A stretch of DNA of 64,000 nt. Origin: Macrostomum hystrix. Taxonomy: Eukaryota > Animalia > Platyhelminthes. The notes beneath the pieces are model-generated. The model was not told the origin of the DNA. It ran no database searches and saw nothing but the letters and a program-made list of their open reading frames with translations. The translations under genes were made by a program, and so were the position numbers. The stretch is taken from positions 5,084,001 through 5,148,000 of the forward strand of contig CATNEN010000001.1 of NCBI GenBank assembly GCA_950097015.1, in the 5' to 3' direction. Below, piece after piece: positions 11,801 through 64,000 of the stretch (the stretch's first letter is position 1; every line of letters starts with the position of its first letter).

Positions 11801-14800
11801 ATCTCCTGAGATTATCTTTGACAGTATCTCCTGAGATTATCTTTGACAGTATCTCCTGAGATTATCTTTGACAGTATCTCCTGAGATTATCTTTGACAGT
11901 ATCGATCCTGAGATTATCTTTGACAGTATCTCCTGAGATTATCTTTGACAGTATCTCCTGAGATTATCTTTGACAGTATCTCCTGAGATTATCTTTGACA
12001 GTATCTCCTGAGATTATCTTTGACAGTATCTCCTGAGATTATCTTTGACAGTATCTCCTGAGATTATCTTTGACAGTATCCTCTGAGATTATCTTTGACA
12101 GTATCCTCTGAGATTATCTTCGACAGTATCCTCTGAGATTATCTTTGACAGTATCCTCTGAGATTATCTTTGACAGTATCCTCTGAGATTATCTTTGACA
12201 GTATCCTCTGAGATTATCTTTGACAGTATCCCCTGAGATTATCTTTGACAGTATCCTCTGAGATTATCTTTGACAGTATCCTCTGAGATTATCTTTGACA
12301 GTATCCCCTGAGATTATCTTTGACAGTATCCTCTGAGATTATCTTTGACAGTATTCCCTGAGATTATCTTTGACAGTATCCCCTGAGATTATCTTTGACA
12401 GTATTCCCTGAGATTATCTTTGACAGTATCCCCTGAGATTATCTTTGACAGTATCCTCTGAGATTATCTTTGACAGTATCTCCTGAGATTATCTTTGACA
12501 GTATCCCCTGAGATTATGTTTGACAGTATCTCCTGAGATTATCTTTGACAGTATCCCCTGAGATTATCTTTGACAGTATCTCCTGAGATTATCTTTGACA
12601 GTATCCCCTGAGATTATCTTTGACAGTATCCCCTGAGATTATGTTTGACAGTATCCTCTGAGATTATCTTTGACAGTATCTCCTGAGATTATCTTTGACA
12701 GTATCCCCTGAGATTATGTTTGACAGTATCCTCTGAGATTATCTTTGACAGTATCCCCTGAGATTATCTTTGACAGTATCCTCTGAGATTATCTTTGACA
12801 GTATTCCCTGAGATTATCTTTGACAGTATCCCCTGAGATTATCTTTGACAGTATCCTCTGAGATTATCTTTGTCAGTATCTTCTGAGATTATGTTTGACA
12901 GTATCCTCTGAGATTATCTTTGACAGTATCCTCTGAGATTATCTTTGACAGTATCCCCTGAGATTTTCTTTGTCAGTATCCTCTGAGATTATCTTTGACA
13001 GTATCCTCTGAGATTATCTTTGACAGTATCCTCTGAGATTATCTTTGACAGTATCCCCTGAGATTTTCTTTGTCAGTATCCTCTGAGATTATCTTTGACA
13101 GTATCCTCTGAGATTATCTTTGACAGTATCCCCTGAGATTATGTTTGACAGTATCCTCTGAGATTATCTTTGACAGTATCCCCTGAGATTATCTTTGACA
13201 GTATCCTCTGAGATTATCTTTGACAGTATCCTCTGAGATTATCTTTGACAGTATCTCCTGAGATTATCTTTGACAGTATCTCCTGAGATTATCTTTGACA
13301 GTATCGATCCTGAGATTATCTTTGACAGTATCTCCTGAGATTATCTTTGACAGTATCTCCTGAGATTATCTTTGACAGTATCTCCTGAGATTATCTTTGA
13401 CAGTATCTCCTGAGATTATCTTTGACAGTATCTCCTGAGATTATCTTTGACAGTATCTCCTGAGATTATCTTTGACAGTATCTCCTGAGATTATCTTTGA
13501 CAGTATCTCCTGAGATTATCTTTGACAGTATCCTCTGAGATTATCTTTGACAGTATCTCCTGAGATTATCTTTGACAGTATCTCCTGAGATTATCTTTGA
13601 CAGTATCTCCTGAGATTATCTTTGACAGTATCTCCTGAGATTATCTTTGACAGTATCTCCTGAGATTATCTTTGACAGTATCTCCTGAGATTATCTTTGA
13701 CAGTATCTCCTGAGATTATCTTTGACAGTATCTCCTGAGATTATCTTTGACAGTATCGATCCTGAGATTATCTTTGACAGTATCTCCTGAGATTATCTTT
13801 GACAGTATCTCCTGAGATTATCTTTGACAGTATCTCCTGAGATTATCTTTGACAGTATCTCCTGAGATTATCTTTGACAGTATCTCCTGAGATTATCTTT
13901 GACAGTATCTCCTGAGATTATCTTTGACAGTATCCTCTGAGATTATCTTTGACAGTATCCTCTGAGATTATCTTCGACAGTATCCTCTGAGATTATCTTT
14001 GACAGTATCCTCTGAGATTATCTTTGACAGTATCCTCTGAGATTATCTTTGACAGTATCCTCTGAGATTATCTTTGACAGTATCCCCTGAGATTATCTTT
14101 GACAGTATCCTCTGAGATTATCTTTGACAGTATCCTCTGAGATTATCTTTGACAGTATCCCCTGAGATTATCTTTGACAGTATCCTCTGAGATTATCTTT
14201 GACAGTATTCCCTGAGATTATCTTTGACAGTATCCCCTGAGATTATCTTTGACAGTATTCCCTGAGATTATCTTTGACAGTATCCCCTGAGATTATCTTT
14301 GACAGTATCCTCTGAGATTATCTTTGACAGTATCTCCTGAGATTATCTTTGACAGTATCCCCTGAGATTATGTTTGACAGTATCTCCTGAGATTATCTTT
14401 GACAGTATCCCCTGAGATTATCTTTGACAGTATCTCCTGAGATTATCTTTGACAGTATCCCCTGAGATTATCTTTGACAGTATCCCCTGAGATTATGTTT
14501 GACAGTATCCTCTGAGATTATCTTTGACAGTATCTCCTGAGATTATCTTTGACAGTATCCCCTGAGATTATGTTTGACAGTATCCTCTGAGATTATCTTT
14601 GACAGTATCCCCTGAGATTATCTTTGACAGTATCCTCTGAGATTATCTTTGACAGTATTCCCTGAGATTATCTTTGACAGTATCCCCTGAGATTATCTTT
14701 GACAGTATCCTCTGAGATTATCTTTGTCAGTATCTTCTGAGATTATGTTTGACAGTATCCTCTGAGATTATCTTTGACAGTATCCTCTGAGATTATCTTT

Positions 14801-17800
14801 GACAGTATCCCCTGAGATTTTCTTTGTCAGTATCCTCTGAGATTATCTTTGACAGTATCCTCTGAGATTATCTTTGACAGTATCCTCTGAGATTATCTTT
14901 GACAGTATCCCCTGAGATTTTCTTTGTCAGTATCCTCTGAGATTATCTTTGACAGTATCCTCTGAGATTATCTTTGACAGTATCCCCTGAGATTATGTTT
15001 GACAGTATCCTCTGAGATTATCTTTGACAGTATCCCCTGAGATTATCTTTGACAGTATCCTCTGAGATTATCTTTGACAGTATCCTCTGAGATTATCTTT
15101 GACAGTATCTCCTGAGATTATCTTTGACAGTATCTCCTGAGATTATCTTTGACAGTATCGATCCTGAGATTATCTTTGACAGTATCTCCTGAGATTATCT
15201 TTGACAGTATCTCCTGAGATTATCTTTGACAGTATCTCCTGAGATTATCTTTGACAGTATCTCCTGAGATTATCTTTGACAGTATCTCCTGAGATTATCT
15301 TTGACAGTATCTCCTGAGATTATCTTTGACAGTATCTCCTGAGATTATCTTTGACAGTATCTCCTGAGATTATCTTTGACAGTATCCTCTGAGATTATCT
15401 TTGACAGTATCTCCTGAGATTATCTTTGACAGTATCTCCTGAGATTATCTTTGACAGTATCTCCTGAGATTATCTTTGACAGTATCTCCTGAGATTATCT
15501 TTGACAGTATCTCCTGAGATTATCTTTGACAGTATCTCCTGAGATTATCTTTGACAGTATCTCCTGAGATTATCTTTGACAGTATCTCCTGAGATTATCT
15601 TTGACAGTATCGATCCTGAGATTATCTTTGACAGTATCTCCTGAGATTATCTTTGACAGTATCTCCTGAGATTATCTTTGACAGTATCTCCTGAGATTAT
15701 CTTTGACAGTATCTCCTGAGATTATCTTTGACAGTATCTCCTGAGATTATCTTTGACAGTATCTCCTGAGATTATCTTTGACAGTATCCTCTGAGATTAT
15801 CTTTGACAGTATCCTCTGAGATTATCTTCGACAGTATCCTCTGAGATTATCTTTGACAGTATCCTCTGAGATTATCTTTGACAGTATCCTCTGAGATTAT
15901 CTTTGACAGTATCCTCTGAGATTATCTTTGACAGTATCCCCTGAGATTATCTTTGACAGTATCCTCTGAGATTATCTTTGACAGTATCCTCTGAGATTAT
16001 CTTTGACAGTATCCCCTGAGATTATCTTTGACAGTATCCTCTGAGATTATCTTTGACAGTATTCCCTGAGATTATCTTTGACAGTATCCCCTGAGATTAT
16101 CTTTGACAGTATTCCCTGAGATTATCTTTGACAGTATCCCCTGAGATTATCTTTGACAGTATCCTCTGAGATTATCTTTGACAGTATCTCCTGAGATTAT
16201 CTTTGACAGTATCCCCTGAGATTATGTTTGACAGTATCTCCTGAGATTATCTTTGACAGTATCCCCTGAGATTATCTTTGACAGTATCTCCTGAGATTAT
16301 CTTTGACAGTATCCCCTGAGATTATCTTTGACAGTATCCCCTGAGATTATGTTTGACAGTATCCTCTGAGATTATCTTTGACAGTATCTCCTGAGATTAT
16401 CTTTGACAGTATCCCCTGAGATTATGTTTGACAGTATCCTCTGAGATTATCTTTGACAGTATCCCCTGAGATTATCTTTGACAGTATCCTCTGAGATTAT
16501 CTTTGACAGTATTCCCTGAGATTATCTTTGACAGTATCCCCTGAGATTATCTTTGACAGTATCCTCTGAGATTATCTTTGTCAGTATCTTCTGAGATTAT
16601 GTTTGACAGTATCCTCTGAGATTATCTTTGACAGTATCCTCTGAGATTATCTTTGACAGTATCCCCTGAGATTTTCTTTGTCAGTATCCTCTGAGATTAT
16701 CTTTGACAGTATCCTCTGAGATTATCTTTGACAGTATCCTCTGAGATTATCTTTGACAGTATCCCCTGAGATTTTCTTTGTCAGTATCCTCTGAGATTAT
16801 CTTTGACAGTATCCTCTGAGATTATCTTTGACAGTATCCCCTGAGATTATGTTTGACAGTATCCTCTGAGATTATCTTTGACAGTATCCCCTGAGATTAT
16901 CTTTGACAGTATCCTCTGAGATTATCTTTGACAGTATCCTCTGAGATTATCTTTGACAGTATCTCCTGAGATTATCTTTGACAGTATCTCCTGAGATTAT
17001 CTTTGACAGTATCGATCCTGAGATTATCTTTGACAGTATCTCCTGAGATTATCTTTGACAGTATCTCCTGAGATTATCTTTGACAGTATCTCCTGAGATT
17101 ATCTTTGACAGTATCTCCTGAGATTATCTTTGACAGTATCTCCTGAGATTATCTTTGACAGTATCCTCTGAGATTATCTTTGACAGTATCTCCTGAGATT
17201 ATCTTTGACAGTATCTCCTGAGATTATCTTTGACAGTATCTCCTGAGATTATCTTTGACAGTATCTCCTGAGATTATCTTTGACAGTATCTCCTGAGATT
17301 ATCTTTGACAGTATCTCCTGAGATTATCTTTGACAGTATCTCCTGAGATTATCTTTGACAGTATCTCCTGAGATTATCTTTGACAGTATCGATCCTGAGA
17401 TTATCTTTGACAGTATCTCCTGAGATTATCTTTGACAGTATCTCCTGAGATTATCTTTGACAGTATCTCCTGAGATTATCTTTGACAGTATCTCCTGAGA
17501 TTATCTTTGACAGTATCTCCTGAGATTATCTTTGACAGTATCTCCTGAGATTATCTTTGACAGTATCCTCTGAGATTATCTTTGACAGTATCCTCTGAGA
17601 TTATCTTCGACAGTATCCTCTGAGATTATCTTTGACAGTATCCTCTGAGATTATCTTTGACAGTATCCTCTGAGATTATCTTTGACAGTATCCTCTGAGA
17701 TTATCTTTGACAGTATCCCCTGAGATTATCTTTGACAGTATCCTCTGAGATTATCTTTGACAGTATCCTCTGAGATTATCTTTGACAGTATCCCCTGAGA

Positions 17801-20800
17801 TTATCTTTGACAGTATCCTCTGAGATTATCTTTGACAGTATTCCCTGAGATTATCTTTGACAGTATCCCCTGAGATTATCTTTGACAGTATTCCCTGAGA
17901 TTATCTTTGACAGTATCCCCTGAGATTATCTTTGACAGTATCCTCTGAGATTATCTTTGACAGTATCTCCTGAGATTATCTTTGACAGTATCCCCTGAGA
18001 TTATGTTTGACAGTATCTCCTGAGATTATCTTTGACAGTATCCCCTGAGATTATCTTTGACAGTATCTCCTGAGATTATCTTTGACAGTATCCCCTGAGA
18101 TTATCTTTGACAGTATCCCCTGAGATTATGTTTGACAGTATCCTCTGAGATTATCTTTGACAGTATCTCCTGAGATTATCTTTGACAGTATCCCCTGAGA
18201 TTATGTTTGACAGTATCCTCTGAGATTATCTTTGACAGTATCCCCTGAGATTATCTTTGACAGTATCCTCTGAGATTATCTTTGACAGTATTCCCTGAGA
18301 TTATCTTTGACAGTATCCCCTGAGATTATCTTTGACAGTATCCTCTGAGATTATCTTTGTCAGTATCTTCTGAGATTATGTTTGACAGTATCCTCTGAGA
18401 TTATCTTTGACAGTATCCTCTGAGATTATCTTTGACAGTATCCCCTGAGATTTTCTTTGTCAGTATCCTCTGAGATTATCTTTGACAGTATCCTCTGAGA
18501 TTATCTTTGACAGTATCCTCTGAGATTATCTTTGACAGTATCCCCTGAGATTTTCTTTGTCAGTATCCTCTGAGATTATCTTTGACAGTATCCTCTGAGA
18601 TTATCTTTGACAGTATCCCCTGAGATTATGTTTGACAGTATCCTCTGAGATTATCTTTGACAGTATCCCCTGAGATTATCTTTGACAGTATCCTCTGAGA
18701 TTATCTTTGACAGTATCCTCTGAGATTATCTTTGACAGTATCTCCTGAGATTATCTTTGACAGTATCTCCTGAGATTATCTTTGACAGTATCGATCCTGA
18801 GATTATCTTTGACAGTATCTCCTGAGATTATCTTTGACAGTATCTCCTGAGATTATCTTTGACAGTATCTCCTGAGATTATCTTTGACAGTATCTCCTGA
18901 GATTATCTTTGACAGTATCTCCTGAGATTATCTTTGACAGTATCTCCTGAGATTATCTTTGACAGTATCTCCTGAGATTATCTTTGACAGTATCTCCTGA
19001 GATTATCTTTGACAGTATCCTCTGAGATTATCTTTGACAGTATCTCCTGAGATTATCTTTGACAGTATCTCCTGAGATTATCTTTGACAGTATCTCCTGA
19101 GATTATCTTTGACAGTATCTCCTGAGATTATCTTTGACAGTATCTCCTGAGATTATCTTTGACAGTATCTCCTGAGATTATCTTTGACAGTATCTCCTGA
19201 GATTATCTTTGACAGTATCTCCTGAGATTATCTTTGACAGTATCGATCCTGAGATTATCTTTGACAGTATCTCCTGAGATTATCTTTGACAGTATCTCCT
19301 GAGATTATCTTTGACAGTATCTCCTGAGATTATCTTTGACAGTATCTCCTGAGATTATCTTTGACAGTATCTCCTGAGATTATCTTTGACAGTATCTCCT
19401 GAGATTATCTTTGACAGTATCCTCTGAGATTATCTTTGACAGTATCCTCTGAGATTATCTTCGACAGTATCCTCTGAGATTATCTTTGACAGTATCCTCT
19501 GAGATTATCTTTGACAGTATCCTCTGAGATTATCTTTGACAGTATCCTCTGAGATTATCTTTGACAGTATCCCCTGAGATTATCTTTGACAGTATCCTCT
19601 GAGATTATCTTTGACAGTATCCTCTGAGATTATCTTTGACAGTATCCCCTGAGATTATCTTTGACAGTATCCTCTGAGATTATCTTTGACAGTATTCCCT
19701 GAGATTATCTTTGACAGTATCCCCTGAGATTATCTTTGACAGTATTCCCTGAGATTATCTTTGACAGTATCCCCTGAGATTATCTTTGACAGTATCCTCT
19801 GAGATTATCTTTGACAGTATCTCCTGAGATTATCTTTGACAGTATCCCCTGAGATTATGTTTGACAGTATCTCCTGAGATTATCTTTGACAGTATCCCCT
19901 GAGATTATCTTTGACAGTATCTCCTGAGATTATCTTTGACAGTATCCCCTGAGATTATCTTTGACAGTATCCCCTGAGATTATGTTTGACAGTATCCTCT
20001 GAGATTATCTTTGACAGTATCTCCTGAGATTATCTTTGACAGTATCCCCTGAGATTATGTTTGACAGTATCCTCTGAGATTATCTTTGACAGTATCCCCT
20101 GAGATTATCTTTGACAGTATCCTCTGAGATTATCTTTGACAGTATTCCCTGAGATTATCTTTGACAGTATCCCCTGAGATTATCTTTGACAGTATCCTCT
20201 GAGATTATCTTTGTCAGTATCTTCTGAGATTATGTTTGACAGTATCCTCTGAGATTATCTTTGACAGTATCCTCTGAGATTATCTTTGACAGTATCCCCT
20301 GAGATTTTCTTTGTCAGTATCCTCTGAGATTATCTTTGACAGTATCCTCTGAGATTATCTTTGACAGTATCCTCTGAGATTATCTTTGACAGTATCCCCT
20401 GAGATTTTCTTTGTCAGTATCCTCTGAGATTATCTTTGACAGTATCCTCTGAGATTATCTTTGACAGTATCCCCTGAGATTATGTTTGACAGTATCCTCT
20501 GAGATTATCTTTGACAGTATCCCCTGAGATTATCTTTGACAGTATCCTCTGAGATTATCTTTGACAGTATCCTCTGAGATTATCTTTGACAGTATCTCCT
20601 GAGATTATCTTTGACAGTATCTCCTGAGATTATCTTTGACAGTATCTCCTGAGATTATCTTTGACAGTATCTCCTGAGATTATCTTTGACAGTATCTCCT
20701 GAGATTATCTTTGACAGTATCTCCTGAGATTATCTTTGACAGTATCTCCTGAGATTATCTTTGACAGTATCTCCTGAGATTATCTTTGACAGTATCTCCT

Positions 20801-53090: not shown

Positions 53091-53682
53091 ATAACTCACC
53101 AAATTCTGATTTTAGTTTAACAGCTGATAGCTAATTAGTGTTTTCAATAAAAAACTATATCGCAAACAGCCTTCAAAGTTGTAGAGATTTATTAAAAAAA
53201 TTGAAATTGTAGAAAAAATGCAATTACACCAGTTTATTGTAGACGATAAACACATATACCAGTACCAGTGCAGCAGATTTTCAGACGATGCATTCAGTTA
53301 TTAAACGAAGCTTTAGTCCAATGGCACGCCGTTGATAGCTAAATGCAGTAAGACGACAAAGCTAATTTCAAACTGTTACAAGATAGGTTTTCATTCGCTG
53401 CTAGAGAAAAAAATGCGCAATCAGCCAATGAGAGAGAAGCAATGTATGGTGGTTAAATGAAAGCACTAGTGATACTACTAAACTGCTGCTTGTAAACAGT
53501 AGGATATATAGACCATTAATTTCTTCAAAAGTAATAAATCACATCGTTTTTATATATTCACAGTCCAGTTAGTCTTAGTTGGTCTTGTCGCTGAAATGTT
53601 TACAATAGTATAAACGCAATTTAGATATAAACAAAACATACTGATTGATAATTTTCAGAAACACAATGAATCTTTTTCAAAA

Positions 53683-53765
53683 TCAGACGACGCGCATGAT
53701 TTCGTAATCAGCAGCTGTTGAGCAGGACTCAAACCTTTAGAGAGATTCCCTGTAGTTATCATCAT
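53683..53765 (-). ncRNA. Box C/D snoRNA, divergent copy (double guide for 28S rRNA)
   Basis: AUGAUGA...GGGAAUCUCU-CUAA(D')...hairpin...CUGAUUA(C')-CGAAAUCAUGCGCGUCGU-CUGA(D). Boxes and guides match the other copies while the internal hairpin differs. Confidence 0.8.
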
Positions 53766-54022
53766 TAAAGGCAATTTAGAGCGTAAACATATGCACCTTT
53801 GGTAGTTTTGCCACTTCCCAGATTCTCAATAGTTCATTAATTTACCCCACACGAGTTTTCCAAGCACATACCAAAAATGCAAGCCACCAGAAGTAATCGG
53901 TTTAGCACGAACTCCGAAATATCTAAAATATAAATAATTAGTAGTTATTAGTTACGGTCGTATATATTCTGCACAAACATAAAAACTAAGCATAATTAAA
54001 AAATATCTAGAACCGATAAAAT

Positions 54023-54061
54023 TCAGACGACGCGCATGATTTCGTAATCAGTAGCCAAGAG
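54023..54061 (-). pseudogene. Truncated snoRNA copy (3' half only: C', guide, box D)
   Basis: Identical to the 3' half of the other copies, then jumps to flank sequence; box C and the D' guide are deleted. Confidence 0.7.
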
Positions 54062-54079
54062 CAATACATAAAAGCAATC

Positions 54080-55055
54080 GTCAATGATCCAAGATCCCCA
54101 GTTGGTCAGCAGTGGTCAATGATCCCGGATCCCCAGTTCGTCAGCAATGGTCAATGATCCCAGATCCCCAGTTGGTCAGCAATGGTCAATGATCCTAGAT
54201 CCCCAGTTGGTCAGCAATGGTCAATGATCCTAGATCCCCAGTTGGTCAGCAATGGTCAATGATCCTAGATCCCCAGTTGTTCAGCAATTGTCAAAGATCC
54301 TAGATCCCCAGTTGTTCAGCAATGGTCAATGATCCTAGATCCCCAGTTGTTCAGCAATGGTCAATGATCCTAGATCCCCAGTTGTTCAGCAATGGTCAAT
54401 GATCCTAGATCCCCAGTTGTTCAGCAATAGTCAAAGATCCTAGATCCCCAGTTGTTCAGCAATGGTCAATGATCCTAGATCCCCAGTTGTTCAGCAATTG
54501 TCAAAGATCCTAGATCCCCAGTTGGTCAGCAATGGTCAATGATCCTAGATCCCCAGTTGTTCAGCAATTGTCAAAGATCCTAGATCCCCAGTTGTTCAGC
54601 AATGGTCAATGATCCTAGATCCCCAGTTGTTCAGCAATTGTCAAAGATCCTAGATCCCCAGTTGTTCAGCAATGGTCAATGATCCTAGATCCCCAGTTGT
54701 TCAGCAATTGTCAAAGATCCTAGATCCCCAGTTGGTCAGCAATGGTCAATGATCCTAGATCCCCAGTTGTTCAGCAATTGTCAAAGATCCTAGATCCCCA
54801 GTTGTTCAGCAATGGTCAATGATCCCAGATCCCCAGTTGGTCAGCAATGGTCAATGATCCTAGATCCCCAGTTGTTCAGCAATGGTCAATGATCCCAGAT
54901 CCCCAGTTGTTCAGCAATGGTCAATGATCCCAGATCCCCAGTTGTTCACCAATGGTCAATGATCCCAGATCCCCAGTTGTTCACCAATGGTCAATGATCT
55001 CAGATACCCAGTTGGTCGGCAATGGTCAATGATCCTAGATCCTCAATTGTTCAAT
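54080..55055. repeat. 35-bp minisatellite (GATCCCAGATCCCCAGTTGGTCAGCAATGGTCAAT) in a snoRNA-host intron
   Basis: About 27 tandem copies; the same unit fills 61600-64000. Confidence 0.95.
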
Positions 55056-55222
55056 AACTTATAACGAATTAGTTTCCATGCACTCACCAAAAATGGTGTT
55101 CTCTTGAAGCAATTGGTTGAGCAGGAACCCAGAACAATCTAAAATGAAAAAAAATTATTATATATATATACTCTGCACAAAGATAAAAAAGGGTTTAGCA
55201 TAATTAAACAAATTGATAAACT

Positions 55223-55307
55223 TCAGACGACGCGCATGATTTCGTAATCGGTAGCCAAGAGGAGATTAATCCCCACCAGGGCTTTAGAGAGATTCCCAAA
55301 TGTTATC
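55223..55307 (-). pseudogene. snoRNA copy disrupted in box C by transposon insertion
   Basis: Matches the intact copies up to plus-strand CAAATGTTATC, then switches to CCCGTGTAAAAG instead of ATCATTG. Confidence 0.75.
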
Positions 55308-55509
55308 CCCGTGTAAAAGTTTGAGCGAGTGAATCCTTCGAGGTAGCGAGTATTTAGCGGGAAAAGCACCGAGGAAATCAACTTTTTTTACACGGTAGCG
55401 CGTTTTTGTCAATTTTGTGACTCGCTTCCAAAGAAACGCGCTGGCGCACGGTCAAATACGCGGTGGTTTTCACGGTGGGAGCTCGCTCGCTGCTTGACTC
55501 GGTGGCCAA

Positions 55510-55715
55510 CTCGCTACTGTAACTCACTCATTCACTCGCTACTGTAACTCGCTCATTCTCTCGCTACTGTAACTCGCTCATTCTCTCGCTACTGTAACTC
55601 GCTCATTCTCTCGCTACTGTAACTCGCTCATTCTCTCGCTACTGTAACTCGCTCATTCTCTCGCTACTGTAACTCGCTCATTCTCTTGCTCATTCTCTCG
55701 CTCATTCTCTCGCTG
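55510..55715. repeat. 25-bp subterminal repeats of the transposon (CTCGCTACTGTAACTCGCTCATTCT)
   Basis: About 7 copies; the ACTCGCT core also occurs inverted (AGCGAGT) at ~55324-55352. Confidence 0.85.
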
Positions 55716-56044
55716 TGCAAAGGAGCGTATAATATATGTAAATATATTTATTTGACGTGCGCAAATATTAACGGTGTGTCCTTTCTTTATGTTTACAGTA
55801 CTAATTTCTTCTGTTTATTGGAGTTACCTTAATTTAGCATTTAGCATTTCGATTAGCGCTTAATGTATTACATTTCACGTCTGGCACTTCAATTGAAAAT
55901 ACAGTAGATTCAATTATATATTACGTTGAATTCAATAATGACCGGGTTCACTGATTAGCCGTGGAGCCCTACCTATTACGCCTTAGCACCGTTGGTAAAC
56001 TGGAAATGAATAGACCAAGAGACCCACTGACTATTCCAGAGTAA

Positions 56045-59000
56045 ATGCCTAAGGATAAAGAATCAAGACGCCTGCGCCTGCTAAACCAGCGAGCCATGCG
56101 CTCCCTGGCTCAGCTCGCTGTAGCCGAGCAACAAGCGGAGCAGCAGCCGAGGGCCCGGTGGGTCAGAAGAACTGCCCAGCTTGCAGTACCCGAAGCTGCC
56201 CCTGCTCCCCAGCAGGCTGCAGTACCCGACGTTGCCCGTGCTCCCCAGCAGGCTGCAGTACCCGACGCTGCCCCTGCTCCCCAGCAGACTGCAATGGCCG
56301 AAGCTGCCCCTACCGACAATGACGCCTACATGTACTTGTCAGACGGCGACACTATCTATGAGGAAGAAGGCGACGAAACGCGTTCCTTTTCTGATGCGTT
56401 TCAAGACGCTGCTGTCGACGCCGCTGCCCTAGATGATCAGGAGGAGTATGTCCCCTACCAGCCTGCTGACGCAGTGGAGGACGACTTCATGGACGGCTTC
56501 GCTATTGATCCGGAGGGTGAGCTTGATGTCGCCGAATTGGAAGAAGACATTTTCGGTCCGCGACCGGACACTGACAACGACGATAGGAGAGGAGGCTACG
56601 GAGTAGATGGAGTACCTATCAGGTACGTGGTAGAAGTGTTTAGGACTACTCACTACGTACTTTTTACTTTGTACATATGCTGCATCATATCTACTATAAC
56701 TATATATATACCCGCAGTTTAATACTGCCCTTAAAAGTTACTATGTACGCACCACTTACCTATCACAGGTTGCGTCCCGACACCGTCGCGTATCCCGGCG
56801 CCAAGTACACGCACAATGGCATTGCGGTCCTGGCCTCCATTTTGGTCGACCGATACAGTCTGCCTCAAACTTTCTTAAACGACCTGCTGATCTACACAGG
56901 CGAGATTCTGCCCGCGGGCAGCGTCTATCCAATGAGTGCATTCGTCTGTCAGAATATCTTCCGCGGAGCATCCGCTCAACGGCGGCAGTTCTGCCCCCGC
57001 TGTAGTGTCGAGGTGTCGAAGGCAGATGTCGACGGTGAGGTAGCATGCAGAAACTGCGCACTATTGCTCTCAGCTGCCATTGTCAGCAACTTCTGGTGCT
57101 TCAACATCAGGCGACAAATTCGCCAGCTGATTGAGCACTCCCATCTGTTGGGCCATGTCACCTTTCCGGTGGACCAACCCGCAATGCCTGGTTGCCTGCA
57201 GCTTGGATCCAGTGCGGAGTATATGCACTTCAAGCGCAGCATTCCGCTACACGATCGGCAGGATTTATCCTACACCGTTAATATCGATGGATTCCCCCTG
57301 TTTATCAATTCGAGGGGAGAAATGTGCCCAGTCTATCTCGTAATAAACGAAGTAACGGAAGAAGCGCGGAAGCCGAAGCTAATTGTCATCTGCGGCCTCT
57401 GGGCAGCTTGCAAGAAGGTGAAGGCCGTTGCTTTCCTTCCGTGGCTGGTCGCGGAGTTGAACGATTTGCGCCGCGACGGCGTGAAGTACAGCACTGGAGG
57501 AGGTCTTGCGGGTACGACGCCGGGTGTCCTGCGCCTACATCCGCTCCTTTTCGTCATGGACGCCCCACAGCGAGCCGAGGTGATGTGCCTGAAACGTCAT
57601 AACTCGGTGCACGGCTGTGATAATTGTTACAGCGTCGCTGTGTTCCGCCGAGGCGCGCTCCGCTTTCTGTATGACGATGGCGGCGAGGGTGTTGTTAAGG
57701 CCACGGAGGCGGGATGCACCCAGACCAGCGTGCGAAACTTGCTCGCCGATGCTGTTCCAAGAGGACGGGACAATTTGCTGGGAGTGATGGACGTGTCCAA
57801 GCTGCTGCACTTAAACGGCTTCGACTACATGCACGGGTGTCCACCCTGTTTGCTGCACCAGGGCTACATGGGTGTGGTGAAGTGGAAGTGGACCCAGCTG
57901 TTCCACCCGATGAAGAAACCGGACCCAATGGCACGTAGCCCTGATCTGTCGGCAAGGGTCGCGGACATTGATGCAGCGGCGTCGCGACTTCACGTCCCGC
58001 TTGACCACCAGCGTGCACCCCGCACCTTGCGGGAGGTCCTGATGTTCCGTGGCCACGAGTTCCAGACCTGGCTAATTGTGTACGGTCCAATGACGTTGGA
58101 GAGTGTATTCACTGCGGCGAACGCACTGAATTACTATCATCACCTCCTACTCCTAGCGGCGCCGCTCTTCTGGATGACATTCGAGGGTGCGCCGCTGACC
58201 GAGGTCCAAACAGCTGAGGTGTCTCTGCTCCAATACCATCGGCTTCTGGGGGAGATGTACTCCGAAGCTGCGATGACGTACAACGCACATCAAGTGTGCA
58301 GGCACCTAGGTAATCAGAGAACTATTTCTCTATTTGTAGTAGAGCTATATGTAGTTTGACAGTGCTTTGTAAAAACAATATTAGCACCTACAGGTACTTT
58401 TAGATCATTTTGATCGAAACGCAATATTGCAGTACTAATACACTTCGTATTCATACTAATTGGCGGAACTGTCGCCCATATTTGCTTTTTAACGCCCCAA
58501 CTTCCTTAGGAATGTACGCCGAGTTGTACGGGCCGCTGTGGAGGCTTTCTGCCGGGCTTTTCGAGTCGGCACACTGCGCCATGCGACGTCGCATTCACGG
58601 TACTCGCCGAGTGGACGTGGAACTGGCGGGGATTCTGCAACGCCAGTTTGAGCGCCGCGACATGCAGGACCGTCTGAAAATTAGCAATCCATTTGACTAC
58701 GAAAGATACACCGACGTTCGCACTGCAGACGGGTGTGCGCTCCGCGAGTTGCGGACCAATATGGCCGACGCCGGCGGGGCTCGGGCATTCGCCAGAGCCA
58801 CCCTGAGCAGCGGTACGCGAATTGCTGTGTATCAGCCGGGTATGCGAAAGCAGAAAATCGTTTCCTGCTTTGTTGCGTACTGCGTGGACGAGCACCGCCG
58901 CGACTTGTTTGAATATGGTCGTGTGGAGGGAATTTATGTCCGTGATTCGAGCACCACTGTGCTGTTGCGCCGTCTACCGACAAGGCCCTTGCTGCAGAAC

Positions 59001-59204
59001 GAGCACCACTTGCTCCACTTGTTGGGGATCCACTCCAACCGTGGCTGCCGATTCTCGCACGTGCGTCGAATCTACGTGGATCCGTTCGGACCACTATCGC
59101 CATTTTATTTCGAGGTGCCTGCAGCGAGCATTCTGGCGGCCTGCTGCGTTAACGACACAAAAGTGGGCTTCCTACCTCATCGTCAATATTCATTTGCAGC
59201 TTGA
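56045..59204 (+). CDS. CACTA/EnSpm-type DDE transposase (TnpD-like), 3 exons
   Basis: Exons 56045-56622, 56769 (or 56718)-58309, 58510-59204 with GT-AG introns in consistent phase. Motifs: zinc ribbon CPRC...CRNC, NIDG (D1), CPVYLVINE, GLW, MDAPQRA (D2), HGCDNC (C2C), FRGHEF..WL, TYNAHQVCRHL (H3-4H), GPLW..SAGLFES (E)...IHGT. Confidence 0.88.
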
Positions 59205-59868
59205 ATTGACATGAAGTTGATGACTGTATAATATATTCCTGTTCCATCAGTACTTTTGACTGCTGTCGGCTGTTTCTGCAACCAATTACTACGTACTGTA
59301 TAGTAATTACTGCGAGCTTGTTGAACTGCTTCAACTGCTTCAAAGAGCTCGAGAGCCGAGTTGGGCGAGACGGAGGGAGAAGAGAAAGAAAACAAACAAT
59401 AGATTCCGCTGCTCTCACTCCTCACATGACCGCGAGACCGTGCTGGCCAGCTGGCTAACCATGGTTTATTGCGATTGTTCAAACGTGTTGCCTTGTGTGT
59501 CCCAAGCGTAATTTCTGTTTCTGTCTGTTTCTGGTCGTGTTTCTGGATTTAGTACTAGTTCTTACGTAAAATACAACATATCTCTAATATATTAGATCGA
59601 GATCGATCTATTAATAGATCCTGGTCCTAGATCTAGGTCTATATCACAGAACAAAACACAGACACGCAAATAGTCTGTAAAAGACCAGTCAAAGACCAGC
59701 TTGATCCTAGATCTAGGATCAGGATCTATTACGATCTAAGTACGATCTTCCTTCTGCTGATACGACGACGTCTTCATCCTGATTGCATACGTCAAATATT
59801 TGTTTGGCCTTCACTGCAAACCATCAATTATCATCATTTCAAACACTTCAGCCAGTGTACAGCCTCGA

Positions 59869-61337
59869 ATGTCTTCGAATTCAGTTGCTATCCTGCACTC
59901 CTCGCGGAAACGTGACGCAGTGACCAGCAACAAGACACTTAAAAAACCCGCAAAGACGCAACGCGAGGTCGCCAAGAAGAAATTACCCCGCGAGGTCGCC
60001 AAGAAGAAGGCGCTATCCAAAGCGCCTGCCGCAGGCCAGGAAAACGAGGCACCGGCCGCAGGTGTGACAAGCGAGGGGCCGGCCGTGGGTCTAGACAGCG
60101 AGGCGCCGGCCGTGGGTCTGGACAGCGAGGCGCCGGCCGCGGGTCTGGACAGCGAGGCTTCCGACGAAGATTCCGACGAAGACGACGACGCTGACGACGG
60201 TGGTCGTCCTCCAATCAAGCGGTCACACTGCAGCCGGCCTCGTGGACCAACGGAACGGAGGGCCGGCCCAGACACATACTTAGTCTTCCGGTTTAGAGAC
60301 CGGAAGCAAGAGCTGCAGGTGTGGCCGCAGTCAAATATTATGGAGCCACAACCTCCGCCTTGCCACATCGGTGCCATTGTTCAGTTGGCCCCTGTCCACA
60401 TTGTTAAACCAGGCTCGAAGAAATATCCCGCTACGGTGGTCGCTGGCCCGAACGAGACCAGGCGCCTCGCCGAAGACGCGATGGCTGCCATCGCCGGTCG
60501 CGAGGCCGCGGCGTCGAGCACCGCTCAACCGGTGGTGCTGCACCACCGCCCTGAGACATGCCCCCGCTGCACCAGCCTCCTCTCTGAGGCGGCGCAACTG
60601 CGCCGCACTGTTACCGATTATGAGGCGCGCCTAGAACGACTCTCAGCGGCTTCGATGACGGCCAGAACTCAAGAACTGGCGCGCAGTGACGAAATTCAGC
60701 TGCTGAAAGACGAGCTCGTTGCGGAGCGGCGCAACAGCGACCGCCTGAAAAAAAGGAGCGACTTATTGCTTGAAACGGTACGTTCGAGCTACGAGCAGTT
60801 GCGCACCGTCAGCAGCTACCTGACTGAAATTGACAAGGAAGCAAAGAAGTCAGCCGTCAGCAGCAGCAAAATTTACAGCCTCGTCAAAGAAGTCGGCCTT
60901 TGGGCGGCACAACAGGTGATACCATCGCGATCGGGTGCCCCAGATGCTGTGGATGCTGCGGATGCTGCAGAGTCTGCGTCGCCACCCGGCTCAGACGCCG
61001 AGCTTGAACAACTTATGTTTGGCCACAGAGTGACCTCGGCCCAAATTCAAATGGCCCACTCCGCCGCTATAACCGCGTCCGCGCACTCCTCTGCCGCCGT
61101 TGACAACAGCATCAGTAGCAGCCTCTTGCCTTACGGATGTAAGGCAACTCGAGCTGCCCTTCATCGAGGGGTACAGCGACATTGTGACGACGAAAGCAAA
61201 CTGCGACAAGATAGCAGATCTAGTTGAAGCCTGCACAGCAATGCCGAAATCGCAGAAGGAGAAGATGGCACTGTACCGGGCGATCATACGCGCCGTTTTT
61301 ACAACGCAGGAGCTGGCCACGTCGTCATTGCACTCAG
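59869..61337 (+). pseudogene. Transposon second gene (TnpA-like): basic/acidic N-terminus, beta-rich domain, coiled coil, frameshifted and truncated C-terminal BEN-like domain
   Basis: ATG at 59869 in ORF 59800..61227; heptad region LRRTVTDYEARLERL...LTEIDKE. The +1 frame open from 61073 encodes LYRAIIRAVFTTQELATSSL, resembling the BEN-domain (L..LF..EELA.SSL.G) signature, and is cut by the host junction. Confidence 0.65.
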
Positions 61338-61478
61338 CAAAAAATGGTGTTGTTTAGAAGCTATTGGTTGAGCAGGAACCCATAACAATCTAAAATGAAA
61401 AATATAATTATTAGATATACACTGCACAAATATGAAAAGGTTTAGCATAATTAAACAAATGTCTAGAATTTATAAACT

Positions 61479-61568
61479 TCAGACGACGCGCATGATTTCG
61501 TAATCAGTAGCCAAGAGGAGATTAATCCCCACTAGGGCTTTAGAGAGATTCCCAAATGTTATCATCAT
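61479..61568 (-). ncRNA. Box C/D snoRNA (double guide; 28S Am3809-equivalent via D', Cm3787-equivalent via D)
   Basis: AUGAUGA UAACAUU UGGGAAUCUCU CUAA ... CUGAUUA CGAAAUCAUGCGCGUCGU CUGA; flanking TTATAAAAC/GTTTATAA terminal stem; box D ~88 nt upstream of an acceptor. Confidence 0.85.
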
Positions 61569-62469
61569 TGTTTTATAATTCACTTTACATAAAAGCAATC
61601 GTCAAGGATCCCAGATCCTCAGTTGGTCAGCAATGGTCAATGATCCCAGATCCCCAGTTGGTCAGCAATGGTCAATAATCCCAGATCCCCAGTTGGTCAG
61701 CAATGGTCCATGATCCCAGATCCTCAGTTGGTCAGCAATAGTCAATGATCCCAGATCCCCAGTTGGTCAGCAATGGTCAATAATCCTAGATCCCCAGTTG
61801 GTCAGCAATGGTCCATGATCCCAGATCCTCAGTTGGTCATCAATAGTCAATGATCCCAGATCCCCAGTTGGTCGGCAATAGTCAATGATCCCAGATCCCC
61901 AGTTGGTCGGCAATAGTCAATGATCCCAGATCCCCAGTTGGTCAGCAATGGTCCATGATCCCAGATCCTCAGTTGGTCATCAATAGTCAATGATCCCAGA
62001 TCCCCAGTTGGTCGGCAATAGTCAATGATCCCAGATCCCCAGTTGGTCGGCAATGGTCAATGATCCCAGATCCCCAGTTCGTCAGCAATGGTCAATGATC
62101 CCAGATCCCCAGTTGGTCAGCAATGGTCCATGATCCCAGATCCTCTGTTGGTCAGCAATAGTCAATGATCCCAGATCCCCAGTTGGTCAGCAATGGTCAA
62201 TGATCCCAGATCCTCAGTTGGTCAGCAATGGTCCATGATCCCAGATCCCCAGTTGGTGAGCAATAGTGTTCGATCACAGATCCTCAATAGTTCAATAACT
62301 CATAACGAATTAGTTTTTATGCACTCACCAAAAGATGGTGTTGTATAGAAGCTATTGGTTGAGCAGGAACCCATAACAATCTAAAATGAAAAATAAAATT
62401 ATTAGAGATACACTGCACAAATATGAAAAGGTTTAGCATAATTAAACAAATGTCTAGAATTTATAAACT

Positions 62470-62559
62470 TCAGACGACGCGCATGATTTCGTAATCAGTA
62501 GCCAAGAGGAGATTAATCCCCACTAGGGCTTTAGAGAGATTCCCAAATGTTATCATCAT
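62470..62559 (-). ncRNA. Box C/D snoRNA, identical tandem copy
   Basis: Same sequence as 61479-61568, 991 bp away. Confidence 0.85.
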
Positions 62560-63460
62560 TGTTTTATAATTCACTTTACATAAAAGCAATCGTCAATGAT
62601 CCCAGATCCTCAGTTGGTCAGCAATGGTCAATGATCCCAGATCCCCAGTTGGTCAGCAATGGTCCATGATCCCAAATCCTCTGTTGGTCAGCAATAGTCA
62701 ATGATCCCAGATCCCCAGTTGGTCAGCAATGGTCAATAATCCTAGATCCCCAGTTGGTCAGCAATGGTCCATGATCCCAGATCCTCAGTTGGTCATCAAT
62801 AGTCAATGATCCCAGATCCCCAGTTCGTCGGCAATAGTCAATGATCCCAGATCCCCAGTTAGTCAGCAATGGTCAATGATTCCAGATCCCCAGTTGGTCG
62901 GCAATAGTCAATGATCCCAGATCCCCAGTTGGTCAGCAATGGTCCATGATGCCAGATCCCCAGTTGGTCAGCAATGGTCAATGATCCCAGATCCCCAGTT
63001 GGTCGGCAATAGTCAATGATCCCAGATCCCCAGTTGGTCAGCAATGGTCCATGATCCCAGATCCTCTGTTGGTCAGCAATAGTCAATGATCCCAGATCCC
63101 CAGTTGGTCAGCAATGGTCAATGATCCCAGATCCCCAGTTGGTCAGCAATGGTCAATGATCCCAGATCCTCAGTTGGTCAGCAATGGTCAATGATCCCAG
63201 ATCCCCAGTTGGTCAGCAATAGTCAATGATCCCAGATCCTCAGTTGGTCAGCAATGGTGTTCGATCACAGATCCTCAATAGTTCAATAACTCATAACGAA
63301 TTAGTTTTTATGCACTCACCAAAAGATGGTGTTGTATAGAAGCTATTGGTTGAGCAGGAACCCATAACAATCTAAAATGAAAAATAAAATTATTAGAGAT
63401 ACACTGCACAAATATGAAAAGGTTTAGCATAATTAAACAAATGTCTAGAATTTATAAACT

Positions 63461-63550
63461 TCAGACGACGCGCATGATTTCGTAATCAGTAGCCAAGAGG
63501 AGATTAATCCCCACTAGGGCTTTAGAGAGATTCCCAAATGTTATTATCAT
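63461..63550 (-). ncRNA. Box C/D snoRNA tandem copy with variant box C (AUGAUAA)
   Basis: Same as the other copies except plus-strand TTATCAT instead of TCATCAT in box C. Confidence 0.7.
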
Positions 63551-64000
63551 TGTTTTATAATTCACTTTACATAAAAGCAATCGTCAATGATCCCAGATCC
63601 TCAGTTGGTCAGCAATGGTCAATGATTCCAGATCCCCAGTTGGTCGGCAATAGTCAATGATCCCAGATCCCCAGTTGGTCAGCAATGGTCCATGATGCCA
63701 GATCCCCAGTTGGTCAGCAATGGTCAATGATCCCAGATCCCCAGTTGGTCGGCAATAGTCAATGATCCCAGATCCCCAGTTGGTCAGCAATGGTCCATGA
63801 TCCCAGATCCTCTGTTGGTCAGCAATAGTCAATGATCCCAGATCCCCAGTTGGTCAGCAATGGTCAATGATCCCAGATCCCCAGTTGGTCAGCAATGGTC
63901 AATGATCCCAGATCCTCAGTTGGTCAGCAATGGTCAATGATTCCAGATCCCCAGTTGGTCGGCAATAGTCAATGATCCCAGATCCCCAGTTGGTCAGCAA

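What the first reader, a model, noticed from the sequence alone, without database searches (positions are those of the whole stretch)
53562..64000. Hidden non-coding snoRNA host gene amplified as a tandem 'micro-exon + minisatellite + snoRNA' cassette
Seen in sequence: what looks like a plain composite satellite (991-bp period) reads on the minus strand as acceptor ttttcattttAG, a 52-nt exon, donor GTGAGT, a 35-bp minisatellite block, then a complete box C/D snoRNA ending ~88-100 nt before the next acceptor. Six snoRNA copies are visible (53683, 54023 partial, 55223 disrupted, 61479, 62470, 63461). The repeated exon is not a multiple of 3 and gives only short ORFs. Established: GAS5/UHG-type non-coding hosts carry intronic C/D snoRNAs a short distance (roughly 70-90 nt) upstream of 3' splice sites. 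Inference: here one exon-intron-snoRNA unit has been multiplied by unequal crossover, probably helped by the minisatellite, giving a repeat-masked gene that amplifies snoRNA dosage.
Basis: partly seen in the sequence, partly recalled or inferred. Interest (0 to 1): 0.88.

Follow-up and report, generated by a model that had tools for sequence, protein, structure and literature searches.

The report
Tandem-repeated flatworm snoRNA host gene
What looks like a satellite is a spliced, non-coding gene in which one unit (a 52-letter exon plus an intron carrying a repeat block and one rRNA-methylation guide RNA) has been copied about 20 times; this layout is already known from mammalian snoRNA clusters, but here it carries an ordinary rRNA guide in an invertebrate.

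Summary
On the minus strand there are 22 copies of one box C/D snoRNA, 6 in the window and 16 beyond its end. Nineteen sit in near-identical units of acceptor, 52-nt exon, GTGAGT donor, 35-bp minisatellite and snoRNA, with 88 nt between the D box and the next AG. Unit lengths run from 886 to 1796 bp and differ only by whole 35-bp copies, so 991 bp is not a fixed period.

Public RNA-derived contigs show splicing at exactly the predicted sites. Two runs hold an 82-letter contig (52+30) that joins the exon's end to its own start, and coverage is confined to the exon. The exons cannot code.

The snoRNA has C, D', C' and D boxes and two guides that match the organism's own 28S rRNA. They predict Cm2628, at the base of helix 71 (human C3787, SNORD10), and Am2650. 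Both guide motifs occur nowhere else in the 220-Mb genome.

The array is split by a 6-kb transposase-like segment and ends in three decayed units.

The mature ~95-nt RNA, the promoter and any benefit of higher dosage were not shown.

This is a new member of a known kind (SNORD115/116-style arrays, UHG/GAS5 hosts). The scan had already noted other snoRNA host genes in this genome, but none in tandem.

The parts
53336..53590 (-). Terminal exon of the transcript. It starts at 53590 after ...tttcAG; its 3' end is not defined.
   Evidence: An RNA contig of run X4 joins an upstream exon to CGACAAGACC... and runs on for at least 255 letters. The letters were located at 53568-53591.
53683..53766 (-). 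Diverged but intact snoRNA copy (type B). The C box, both guides, D', C' and D are identical to the array copies; the inner spacer is different but also forms a hairpin.
   Evidence: Alignment to the array copy, fold, sequence.
53872..53922 (-). Decayed 51-nt exon with donor GTATGT.
   Evidence: A 1409-nt contig of run X5 joins the end of exon 55138-55088 to ATATTTCGGAG....
54023..54060 (-). Partial snoRNA copy. Only the 3' half is left (C' box, D guide, D box); it is dead.
54073..55053 (-). 35-bp minisatellite, 28 copies, in the intron of a decayed unit.
   Evidence: Tandem Repeats Finder.
55088..55138 (-). Decayed 51-nt exon with donor GTGAGT.
   Evidence: X5 contig with 6 differences from the array exon, flanked on one side by the exon ending at 56760 and on the other by exon 53922. 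Sequence.
55223..55310 (-). snoRNA copy whose C box is replaced by the inserted segment.
   Evidence: Its intron form is seen as a contig in X4.
55311..61328 (+). 6-kb GC-rich segment that splits the array. It holds a 560-aa TNP2/Transposase_21-like ORF at 56677-58359 on the + strand.
   Evidence: Composition, ORFs, ESM atlas features 0.97 (a lead only), Pfam silent, 65-73% identical paralogues elsewhere, no terminal inverted repeats.
56760..58064 (-). Exon read from the minus strand of the inserted segment, with donor AG|GTAAGT at 56760/56759. The upstream limit is only what the contig's length implies.
   Evidence: X5 and X4 contigs join ...CCTGTGATAG to the next exon. Located at 56763-56792. 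Sequence.
61338..61389 (-). Last exon of the homogeneous array. Its donor is mutated to CTGAGT at the edge of the inserted segment.
61479..61569 (-). Array snoRNA copy 1, from C box to D box (91 nt; about 95-100 nt with the terminal stem AAAC/GUUU).
61594..62267 (-). 35-bp minisatellite block of the intron.
62329..62380 (-). 52-nt array exon, with acceptor AG at 62382-62381 and donor GT at 62328-62327.
   Evidence: X5: an 82-nt contig at depth 254 covers the exon only, and its loose end is the exon's own start. X6: a joint 62380->62329 that 'goes back 52'.
62470..62560 (-). Array snoRNA copy 2.
   Evidence: An X4 contig spans 62411-62621.
62585..63258 (-). 35-bp minisatellite block.
63320..63371 (-). 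52-nt array exon.
63461..63551 (-). Array snoRNA copy 3, with a mutated C box (AUGAUAA).
63576..64000 (-). 35-bp minisatellite block. The array continues beyond the window for 16 more units.

Best explanation
This is a spliced, polyadenylated, non-coding snoRNA host gene on the minus strand. It spans about 31 kb, from about window coordinate 84,700 (beyond the window's end) down to about 53,300. Its body is one cassette repeated 19 times: a 52-nt exon, then an intron holding 17-43 copies of a 35-bp minisatellite and one box C/D snoRNA 88 nt before the 3' splice site. Three older, decayed cassettes lie at the 3' end, and a 6-kb transposase-like segment is inserted between the two parts. Splicing of each intron is inferred to release one ~95-100-nt snoRNA, with snoRNP assembly on the intron followed by debranching and exonuclease trimming, as for other intronic C/D snoRNAs. 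The snoRNA is a double guide. The 13 nt before box D pair with 28S 2624-2636 and put C2628 at the fifth position; this is the closing pair of helix 71, equivalent to human Cm3787 guided by SNORD10. The 10 nt before the D'-like box CUAA pair with 2647-2656 and put A2650 at the fifth position. The joined exons form a repeat RNA that cannot code. The array grew by unequal exchange or block duplication and is kept uniform by the same process. Shown: the DNA anatomy, splicing at the predicted sites, lack of coding potential, guide complementarity, and uniqueness of the locus. Inferred: snoRNA release, the two methylations, and the mode of growth.
For: Anatomy: there are 22 copies, and all 19 array spacings equal 11 mod 35. 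The units are aligned.

Splicing: X5 covers only 62329-62385 within the unique part of the stretch. Its 82-nt contig (52 + k-1) has depth 254, and its loose end reads the exon's start straight after the exon's end. X6 has an identical 82-nt contig with the joint 62380->62329. A 1409-nt X5 contig joins 56760|55138 and 55088|53922 at GT-AG sites. X4 joins an exon to 53590. X1, the DNA source run, holds the unspliced form as one 383-nt contig.

No DNA copy of the joined exons exists in the genome.

Non-coding: there is a TAG inside the exon in one frame and 52 is not a multiple of 3, so every frame meets a stop within three exons. From the exon's only ATG the open frame is about 24 codons (plus arithmetic on a single exon).

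Guides: 13 bp (11 Watson-Crick plus 2 G-U) abut box D, and 10 Watson-Crick bp lie one nucleotide from D'. The two targets are 22 nt apart on the organism's own LSU rRNA. Shuffled guides match as well in 32 of 1000 and 5 of 1000 trials. G2612 and C2628 close a hairpin 16 nt apart, as PMC5027482 describes for human G3771-C3787, guided by SNORD10. The plant Rfam family snoR44/J54 carries the same UGGGAAUCUCU guide directly before its D box.

Selection signature: the diverged copy at 53683 keeps all four boxes and both guides unchanged, while its spacer and flanks have changed.

The locus is the only place with either guide motif.

Growth: a two-unit block of 1877 bp is duplicated at 100% identity, and another pair of 1621-bp units is 99.94% identical.
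Against: No run showed the mature small RNA. All runs were contigs, which cannot show RNA ends or levels.

No Rfam family reaches its threshold.

The D' box is CUAA rather than CUGA.

Two of the 19 array copies have a broken C box, one has a changed D' guide and one a changed C' box. Individual copies are therefore not each under strong selection.

Run X4 shows the 3' exons but no exon-to-exon joint of the array. The array and the 3' part may therefore be separate or alternative transcripts.

The first exon and promoter were not found.

The copy number rests on one assembly only.

Confidence: 0.8

Rival explanations
1. The cassettes are not an independent gene. They would be the spliced 3' UTR, or a downstream member of a trans-spliced operon, of the SET/TAF-I-like gene that ends about 1.3 kb upstream on the same strand. 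The snoRNAs would then be hosted by a coding gene's transcript.
For: The last exon of the SET-like gene (acidic tail, TAA) lies at L014:~1800-1905 on the same strand. No exon resembling the array exon, and no proven promoter, lies between it and the array. Earlier notes on this genome (s1-846196, s1-849816) raise operon-like links between snoRNA hosts and neighbouring genes.
Against: An AATAAA at L014:1441 would end the SET mRNA before the array. A TATAAA at about 84,761 followed by a GGTAAG donor at 84,656 offers an own first exon. No contig links SET to the 52-nt exons, although this was not directly tested.
Confidence: 0.12
2. The amplification is neutral satellite-like growth. One or a few snoRNA copies would be enough, and the 19 copies reflect unequal exchange in a genome prone to tandem repeats, not selection for dosage.
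For: Exact block duplications and 99.5% mean identity point to very recent turnover. A C-box mutation has itself been copied into two adjacent units.
Against: This rival is compatible with the best explanation and disputes only the dosage claim. Seventeen of the 19 array copies keep all four boxes, and the locus is the only source of both guides, so at least some copies must be kept.
Confidence: 0.4
3. The functional product is the spliced repeat RNA made of 19 identical 52-nt exons, and the snoRNA-like elements are secondary or inactive.
For: The exon repeat is abundant in what looks like poly(A) RNA, with depth 254 against 11.7 for the single-copy 3' exons. The exon is as uniform as the snoRNA.
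Against: Between the old and new units the exon has diverged (5-6 changes in 51-52 nt), while the snoRNA's boxes and guides have not changed at all. Known non-coding hosts show the same pattern of poorly conserved exons. The exon has no significant complementarity to rRNA or to the snoRNA.
Confidence: 0.06
4. This is a plain composite satellite, and the splice-site and snoRNA motifs are chance resemblances.
For: No Rfam family hit. Folding energy is not better than shuffled sequence (z -0.9 and -1.65), which is also usual for true C/D snoRNAs.
Against: Exon-exon joints lie at exactly the predicted GT/AG sites in RNA-derived contigs of two studies. Two guides in the correct register match neighbouring 28S sites.
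Confidence: 0.01

Closest known systems
Mammalian SNORD116 / SNORD115 arrays (Prader-Willi region); also, from my own knowledge, SNORD113/114 at DLK1-DIO3 and rat RBII-36 in the Bsr gene
   Same: Both have a tandem repeat unit of one short non-coding exon plus one intron with one box C/D snoRNA. There are dozens of near-identical units, all transcribed as a long spliced non-coding RNA. [quoted passage not shown]
   Different: The mammalian arrays carry orphan snoRNAs without rRNA targets, and they are imprinted and neuron-enriched. The snoRNA here is an ordinary double guide for two neighbouring 28S sites. The organism is an invertebrate. The introns are inflated by a variable minisatellite, and this locus is the only source of these guides.
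Non-coding snoRNA host genes of the UHG / GAS5 / Drosophila Uhg type
   Same: Both are spliced and polyadenylated with no coding potential and one snoRNA per intron. The snoRNA lies some 60-90 nt upstream of the 3' splice site, and the exons are poorly conserved relative to the snoRNAs. In Drosophila, 42% of C/D snoRNAs lie in seven Uhg lncRNAs (PMC11014333).
   Different: Those hosts carry many different snoRNAs, with at most a few isoforms of each. This gene carries one snoRNA 19-22 times, with identical exons. A 5'TOP start, typical of UHG/GAS5, was not found here.
Human SNORD10 (28S Cm3787), SNORD79, and the plant snoR44/J54 family
   Same: The D guide targets the cytidine that closes helix 71, which PMC5027482 gives as fully methylated C3787 guided by SNORD10. 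The D' guide UGGGAAUCUCU is the same as the D guide in the consensus of Rfam snoR44/J54.
   Different: Here one RNA carries both. Overall sequence similarity is below every Rfam threshold (best 17.6 bits against a cutoff of 48), so this is not a member of those families by that test.

Membership tests
Box C/D snoRNA (2'-O-methylation guide) | C box RUGAUGA near the 5' end and D box CUGA near the 3' end | tested here: met
   AUGAUGA and CUGA are present in 17 of the 19 array copies and in the diverged copy. Two copies have AUGAUAA.
Box C/D snoRNA (2'-O-methylation guide) | Short terminal stem bringing C and D together | tested here: met
   A 4-bp AAAC/GUUU stem flanks the boxes in the minimum-energy and centroid folds.
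Box C/D snoRNA (2'-O-methylation guide) | Internal D' and C' boxes | tested here: inconclusive
   C' is UGAUUA and D' is CUAA. Both are degenerate, as is common, but both are identical in the diverged copy. A hairpin lies between them in both versions.
Box C/D snoRNA (2'-O-methylation guide) | At least 10 bp of antisense to rRNA, ending one or two nucleotides before D or D' | tested here: met
   13 bp abut box D (LSU 2624-2636). 10 Watson-Crick bp lie one nucleotide before D' (LSU 2647-2656). The rRNA is the organism's own.
Box C/D snoRNA (2'-O-methylation guide) | Target is a position known to be methylated in other eukaryotes | tested here: inconclusive
   C2628 corresponds to human C3787 (SNORD10) by its position as the helix 71 closing pair, as described in PMC5027482. 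I could not confirm A2650 = A3809 in any paper; the only support is the shared guide with snoR44/J54.
Box C/D snoRNA (2'-O-methylation guide) | A stable ~70-120-nt RNA bound by fibrillarin/NOP56/NOP58 | not testable with these tools
   Only contigs were available. X4 holds the snoRNA with its flanks at low depth, which does not show a mature RNA.
Any curated Rfam snoRNA family (SNORD10, SNORD79, snoR44_J54 and others) | Score at or above the family's gathering threshold | tested here: not met
   No hit at gathering thresholds. The best were snoR44_J54 at 17.6 bits against a cutoff of 48 and SNORD53_SNORD92 at 16.5 against 46.
Non-coding snoRNA host gene (UHG/GAS5 type) | Spliced transcript with the snoRNAs in its introns | tested here: met
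   Exon-exon joints at the predicted sites in X5 and X6, and joints of the 3' exons in X5 and X4.
Non-coding snoRNA host gene (UHG/GAS5 type) | No protein-coding potential | tested here: met
   The 52-nt exon has an internal TAG, so every frame is stopped within 3 exons and the longest ATG-started frame is about 24 codons. I did not build or search a joined model.
Non-coding snoRNA host gene (UHG/GAS5 type) | One snoRNA per intron, about 60-90 nt upstream of the 3' splice site | tested here: met
   The gap from D box to AG is 88 nt in all 19 units and 84-100 nt in the decayed units. A CTAAT branch-like motif lies about 24 nt before the AG.
Non-coding snoRNA host gene (UHG/GAS5 type) | 5'TOP transcription start | tested here: inconclusive
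   The first exon was not identified. Candidates are a TATAAA at about 84,761 with a GGTAAG donor at 84,656, and a pyrimidine tract near L014:1505.
Tandemly repeated snoRNA clusters (SNORD115/116 type) | Repeat unit of exon plus intron with one snoRNA, in many near-identical copies within one transcription unit | tested here: met
   19 units are 98.8-100% identical in their unique part. The circular 82-nt contig implies consecutive identical exons in RNA.
Tandemly repeated snoRNA clusters (SNORD115/116 type) | Orphan snoRNA, imprinted, tissue-specific | tested here: not met
   The snoRNA has two canonical rRNA targets. Imprinting and tissue pattern cannot be tested here. The locus therefore works like these clusters but is not homologous to them.

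The most novel reading that the evidence does not exclude
The array may be more than a bag of redundant guides, in three possible ways. (a) The 52-nt exon may be an exapted half of an old snoRNA copy, since it aligns colinearly with the inner and 3' part of the diverged copy (1 of 3000 shuffles scored as well). (b) The abundant RNA made of about 19 identical exons may have a function of its own, as has been proposed for the SNORD116 host RNA. (c) Because this copy-number-unstable locus is the only source of the guides for Cm2628 and Am2650 next to intersubunit bridge B3, differences in copy number between individuals could set the level of these two methylations. That would be heritable ribosome heterogeneity caused by tandem-repeat length.
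Probability: 0.12. Interest if true: 0.65.

Novelty: new member of a known kind. Interest (0 to 1): 0.42.

Why it matters
It shows that the exon-intron-snoRNA tandem array, so far a textbook oddity of imprinted mammalian loci with orphan snoRNAs, also arises in an invertebrate for a housekeeping rRNA guide. That supports unequal exchange as a general route to snoRNA amplification. For annotation, about 30 kb that repeat-masking would discard is an expressed gene and the genome's only source of two conserved rRNA methylation guides. The practical lesson is that repeat-masked DNA can hide essential non-coding genes. The locus is also a convenient natural system for asking whether snoRNA gene dosage limits rRNA methylation. 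The mechanism itself is ordinary.

Tried and rejected
- Rfam at gathering thresholds on the whole window gave nothing. Permissive scans gave only weak, partial hits. Those to nos_TCE, Afu_190 and sR28 fall on the minisatellite and are noise.
- A third guide (CUCCUCUUGGCUA before an inner CUGA, resembling SNORD53/92) was considered and rejected. That stretch is not conserved in the diverged copy, and the CUGA is part of the C' box UGAUUA.
- An 11-bp match of the inner spacer to LSU 2649-2659 was rejected for the same reason.
- Pfam on the four ORFs of the inserted segment gave no family.
- No terminal inverted repeats bound that segment, so it cannot be called a clean transposon insertion.
- A search for an array-like first exon upstream found only the minisatellite edge.
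- Complementarity of the exon and the minisatellite to rRNA is at chance level.
- Literature searches for the A3809/SNORD79 assignment found nothing, and no supplement of PMC5027482 is held. Two searches failed on syntax.
- Nothing has been published on Macrostomum snoRNAs.
- The organism name (a Macrostomum flatworm) comes only from earlier notes and was not verified. The rRNA sizes (LSU 3759 nt, SSU 1812 nt) merely fit a non-insect invertebrate.
- Run X4 did not show the array's exon-exon joint. Its exon contig differs from the assembly in its last 8 letters, so that sample's allele or transcript differs. Contigs cannot show absence.

Full report
**What is in the DNA**

The window is G000:C1:5,084,001-5,148,000 of a 220-Mb eukaryotic assembly. 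Each unit runs as follows:
- an acceptor ttttcattttAG;
- a 52-nt exon (for example 62380-62329);
- a GTGAGT donor;
- about 62 nt of unique intron;
- a block of 35-bp repeats;
- about 25 nt of unique sequence;
- a 91-nt stretch from a C box (AUGAUGA) to a D box (CUGA);
- 88 nt up to the next AG.

A search for the D-guide-plus-D-box string over the window and 40 kb fetched beyond it found 22 copies. Sixteen more follow, up to window-equivalent 82,992. A whole-genome search with one unit found matches in this locus only.

**The period is not fixed**

The 19 homogeneous units are spaced 886 to 1796 bp apart. Every spacing equals 11 mod 35, so the units differ only in having 17 to 43 copies of the 35-bp repeat.

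The unique 326 nt of the units are 98.8-100% identical, with a mean of 99.5%. One block of two units (1877 bp) occurs twice at 100% identity, 3.7 kb apart. Two 1621-bp units are 99.94% identical. This is the signature of recent unequal exchange or block duplication.

High-identity copies of this 35-bp repeat occur only in this locus. Related repeats, 66-75% identical, occur at other places in the genome. Earlier notes of this scan (s1-402488) say that intron minisatellites just downstream of donors are common in this genome. I saw two more next door: a 21-bp array in the last intron of the upstream gene, and a 39-bp array at the 5' edge of this locus.

**Is it spliced?**

Yes. One stretch (window:62250-62660) was laid against contigs of four public runs.

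- **X1**, the likely DNA source of the assembly, covers the whole unique part with one 383-nt contig and shows no joint there.
- **X5** (same organism, another study, 42 Mb of contigs, so most likely RNA-seq) covers the exon and nothing else in the unique part of the stretch. It holds an 82-nt contig at depth 254 spanning 62329-62385. Its loose end beyond the exon's last base reads the exon's first 18 letters. Eighty-two is 52 + 30, which is the length a k=31 assembler gives to a perfect 52-nt tandem repeat.
- **X6** (labelled as a different organism, 2016) holds an identical 82-nt contig with the explicit joint 62380->62329, reported as 'goes back 52'.

No 52-nt tandem exists as DNA in this genome. 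These contigs therefore come from RNA in which consecutive 52-nt exons are joined at exactly the predicted GT and AG.

X5 also shows depth on the minisatellite (24-90) but none on the unique intron parts. That fits low-level precursor RNA, whose repeat words are multiplied several hundred-fold.

**The 3' end of the gene**

Below 55,330 lie three older cassettes:
- one whose snoRNA lost its C box (55223), with a 51-nt exon at 55138-55088;
- one with only the 3' half of the snoRNA (54023), with a 51-nt exon at 53922-53872;
- one intact but diverged snoRNA (53683), followed by a terminal exon starting at 53590.

A 1409-nt X5 contig reads as about 1.3 kb of sequence ending at 56760, then exon 55138-55088, then exon 53922. 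Both joints fall at GT-AG sites on the minus strand. An X4 contig joins an exon to the terminal exon at 53590 and runs on for at least 255 nt.

The upstream 1.3 kb lies inside a 6-kb GC-rich segment (55311-61328) that interrupts the array. This segment replaces everything from just after a donor to just inside a snoRNA. The exon at its upper edge (61389-61338) has its donor mutated to CTGAGT.

The segment's + strand holds a 560-aa ORF that resembles TNP2/Transposase_21 proteins by language-model features only (0.97). Pfam is silent. Only 65-73% identical paralogues exist elsewhere, and there are no terminal inverted repeats. It is therefore probably an old transposon-derived insertion, but this is not proven.

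It remains open whether the 19 array exons and the 3' exons sit on one RNA. In X5 the depth ratio of 254 to 11.7 is close to the exon count. In X4, however, the 3' joints are seen without the array joint. Contig depths and absences are weak evidence either way.

**Coding potential**

I handled the exons one by one and built no joined model. The 52-nt exon has a TAG at positions 27-29, and 52 is not divisible by three, so any reading frame meets that stop within three exons. From the exon's only ATG (positions 7-9) the frame closes in the next exon after about 24 codons (plus arithmetic). The decayed exons also carry stops or differ in length (51 nt). The transcript is non-coding.

**The snoRNA**

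The rDNA of the same genome was fetched and annotated with Rfam: LSU 3759 nt, SSU 1812 nt, 5.8S 154 nt.

- **D guide.** The 13 nt directly before box D pair with LSU 2624-2636 (11 Watson-Crick plus 2 G-U pairs). This puts C2628 at the fifth position.
- **D' guide.** The 10 nt ending one nucleotide before the D'-like box CUAA pair perfectly with LSU 2647-2656. This puts A2650 at the fifth position.
- **Chance.** Shuffled guides do as well in 3.2% and 0.5% of trials respectively, before counting the correct register and the 22-nt proximity of the two targets.
- **Target identity.** G2612 and C2628 close a 17-nt hairpin. This is what PMC5027482 describes for human G3771-C3787 at the base of helix 71, near bridge B3, with C3787 fully methylated and guided by SNORD10. 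The plant Rfam family snoR44/J54 has the same UGGGAAUCUCU guide directly before its D box. That supports both the guide and the register of the CUAA box.
- **Structure.** A 4-bp terminal stem and a hairpin between D' and C' are predicted.
- **Conservation.** The strongest internal evidence for function is the diverged copy at 53683. All four boxes and both guides are letter-for-letter the same as in the array copies. The spacer between D' and C' has been replaced by a different hairpin, and the flanks are unalignable.
- **Uniqueness.** Both guide-plus-box motifs occur only in this locus in 220 Mb. This gene is therefore the only recognisable source of these two guides.
- **Damaged copies.** Of the 19 array copies, two adjacent ones have a broken C box (AUGAUAA), one has a changed D' guide and one a changed C' box.

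**Surroundings**

About 1.3 kb upstream of the array's 5' edge, on the same strand, a SET/TAF-I-like (NAP-domain) gene ends with an acidic tail, a TAA and an AATAAA. Between it and the array lie a TATAAA (about 84,761) and a GGTAAG donor (84,656) that could define an own first exon. This is inference only. Read-through or operon-type expression from SET cannot be excluded.

**How it most likely works**

RNA polymerase II transcribes the array. Each intron is spliced out, and a box C/D snoRNP assembles on the snoRNA, which lies 88 nt upstream of the 3' splice site. That distance is in the range known to favour splicing-coupled assembly in other animals (established knowledge, Hirose and Steitz 2001, from memory). 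Debranching and exonucleases then trim the intron, including the minisatellite, down to the protected ~95-100-nt snoRNA. The snoRNP would methylate C2628 and A2650 of 28S rRNA. The joined exons form a by-product repeat RNA.

The anatomy, the splicing, the guides and the uniqueness of the locus are shown. Processing, methylation and any dosage effect are inferred.

**Comparison and novelty**

The layout is the one known from the mammalian SNORD116/115 arrays (PMC4742849, PMC4171697) and, from my own knowledge, from SNORD113/114 and rat RBII-36. The general gene type is that of UHG/GAS5 and the Drosophila Uhg genes (PMC11014333).

It differs in four ways: it carries a canonical double rRNA guide rather than an orphan; it lies in an invertebrate, said by earlier notes to be a Macrostomum flatworm, which I did not verify; it is the sole source of its guides; and its introns are inflated by a variable minisatellite. 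No paper on snoRNAs of this group was found. Other notes of this scan report several non-coding snoRNA hosts in the same genome, but none with a tandem cassette.

I file it as a new member of a known kind and rate its interest as moderate.

One side observation may deserve follow-up. The 52-nt exon aligns colinearly with the inner and 3' half of the diverged snoRNA copy (score 31; 1 of 3000 shuffles scored as well). The exon may therefore be an exapted snoRNA remnant.

Noticed in passing
L020:67-229 (G000:C15:10067-10229), minus strand: A full-length U1 snRNA gene (151.7 bits against a cutoff of 69.5) lies in the rDNA intergenic spacer, about 2 kb downstream of the LSU gene and on the same strand. 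It is probably repeated with every 11.6-kb rDNA unit.
   Followed up: no
L014:1800-4075 (window-equivalent 85,800-88,075), minus strand: A SET/TAF-I-like NAP-domain gene lies directly upstream of the snoRNA array on the same strand. Its last intron is filled by a 21-bp satellite of about 61 copies (L014:1900-3183) that abuts the last exon's acceptor.
   Followed up: partly
window 55311-61328: A 6-kb GC-rich segment splits the array. It has four + strand ORFs (225, 560, 264 and 475 aa). The 560-aa ORF looks like a TNP2/Transposase_21 protein by ESM atlas features only. Its minus strand supplies an exon (donor at 56760) to the host transcript, which is exonisation of an antisense transposon remnant.
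   Followed up: partly
window 62329-62380 compared with 53683-53766: The 52-nt exon shares an exact 11-mer (TCCTGCTCAAC) and a colinear 45-column alignment with the inner and 3' half of the diverged snoRNA copy (1 of 3000 shuffles scored as well). The exon may descend from a snoRNA copy.
   Followed up: partly
L014:112-500 (window-equivalent 84,112-84,500): A different 39-bp minisatellite (10 copies) replaces the usual 5' intron sequence at the upstream edge of the first cassette. One copy contains a GTAAGT.
   Followed up: no
window 55510-55714: A 25-bp tandem repeat (8 copies, 95% matches) lies at the lower edge of the inserted segment.
   Followed up: no
window 8000-20000: Composition is flat to the third decimal (GC 0.367-0.370, constant skews) over 12 kb, which indicates a long, very regular tandem array. 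I did not examine it.
   Followed up: no
window 62337-62383, run X4: In another sample, an exon identical to the array exon over its first 44 letters lies between the insert-derived exon and the terminal exon, and it ends differently from every exon in the assembly. This suggests that the locus differs in structure or sequence between individuals.
   Followed up: no
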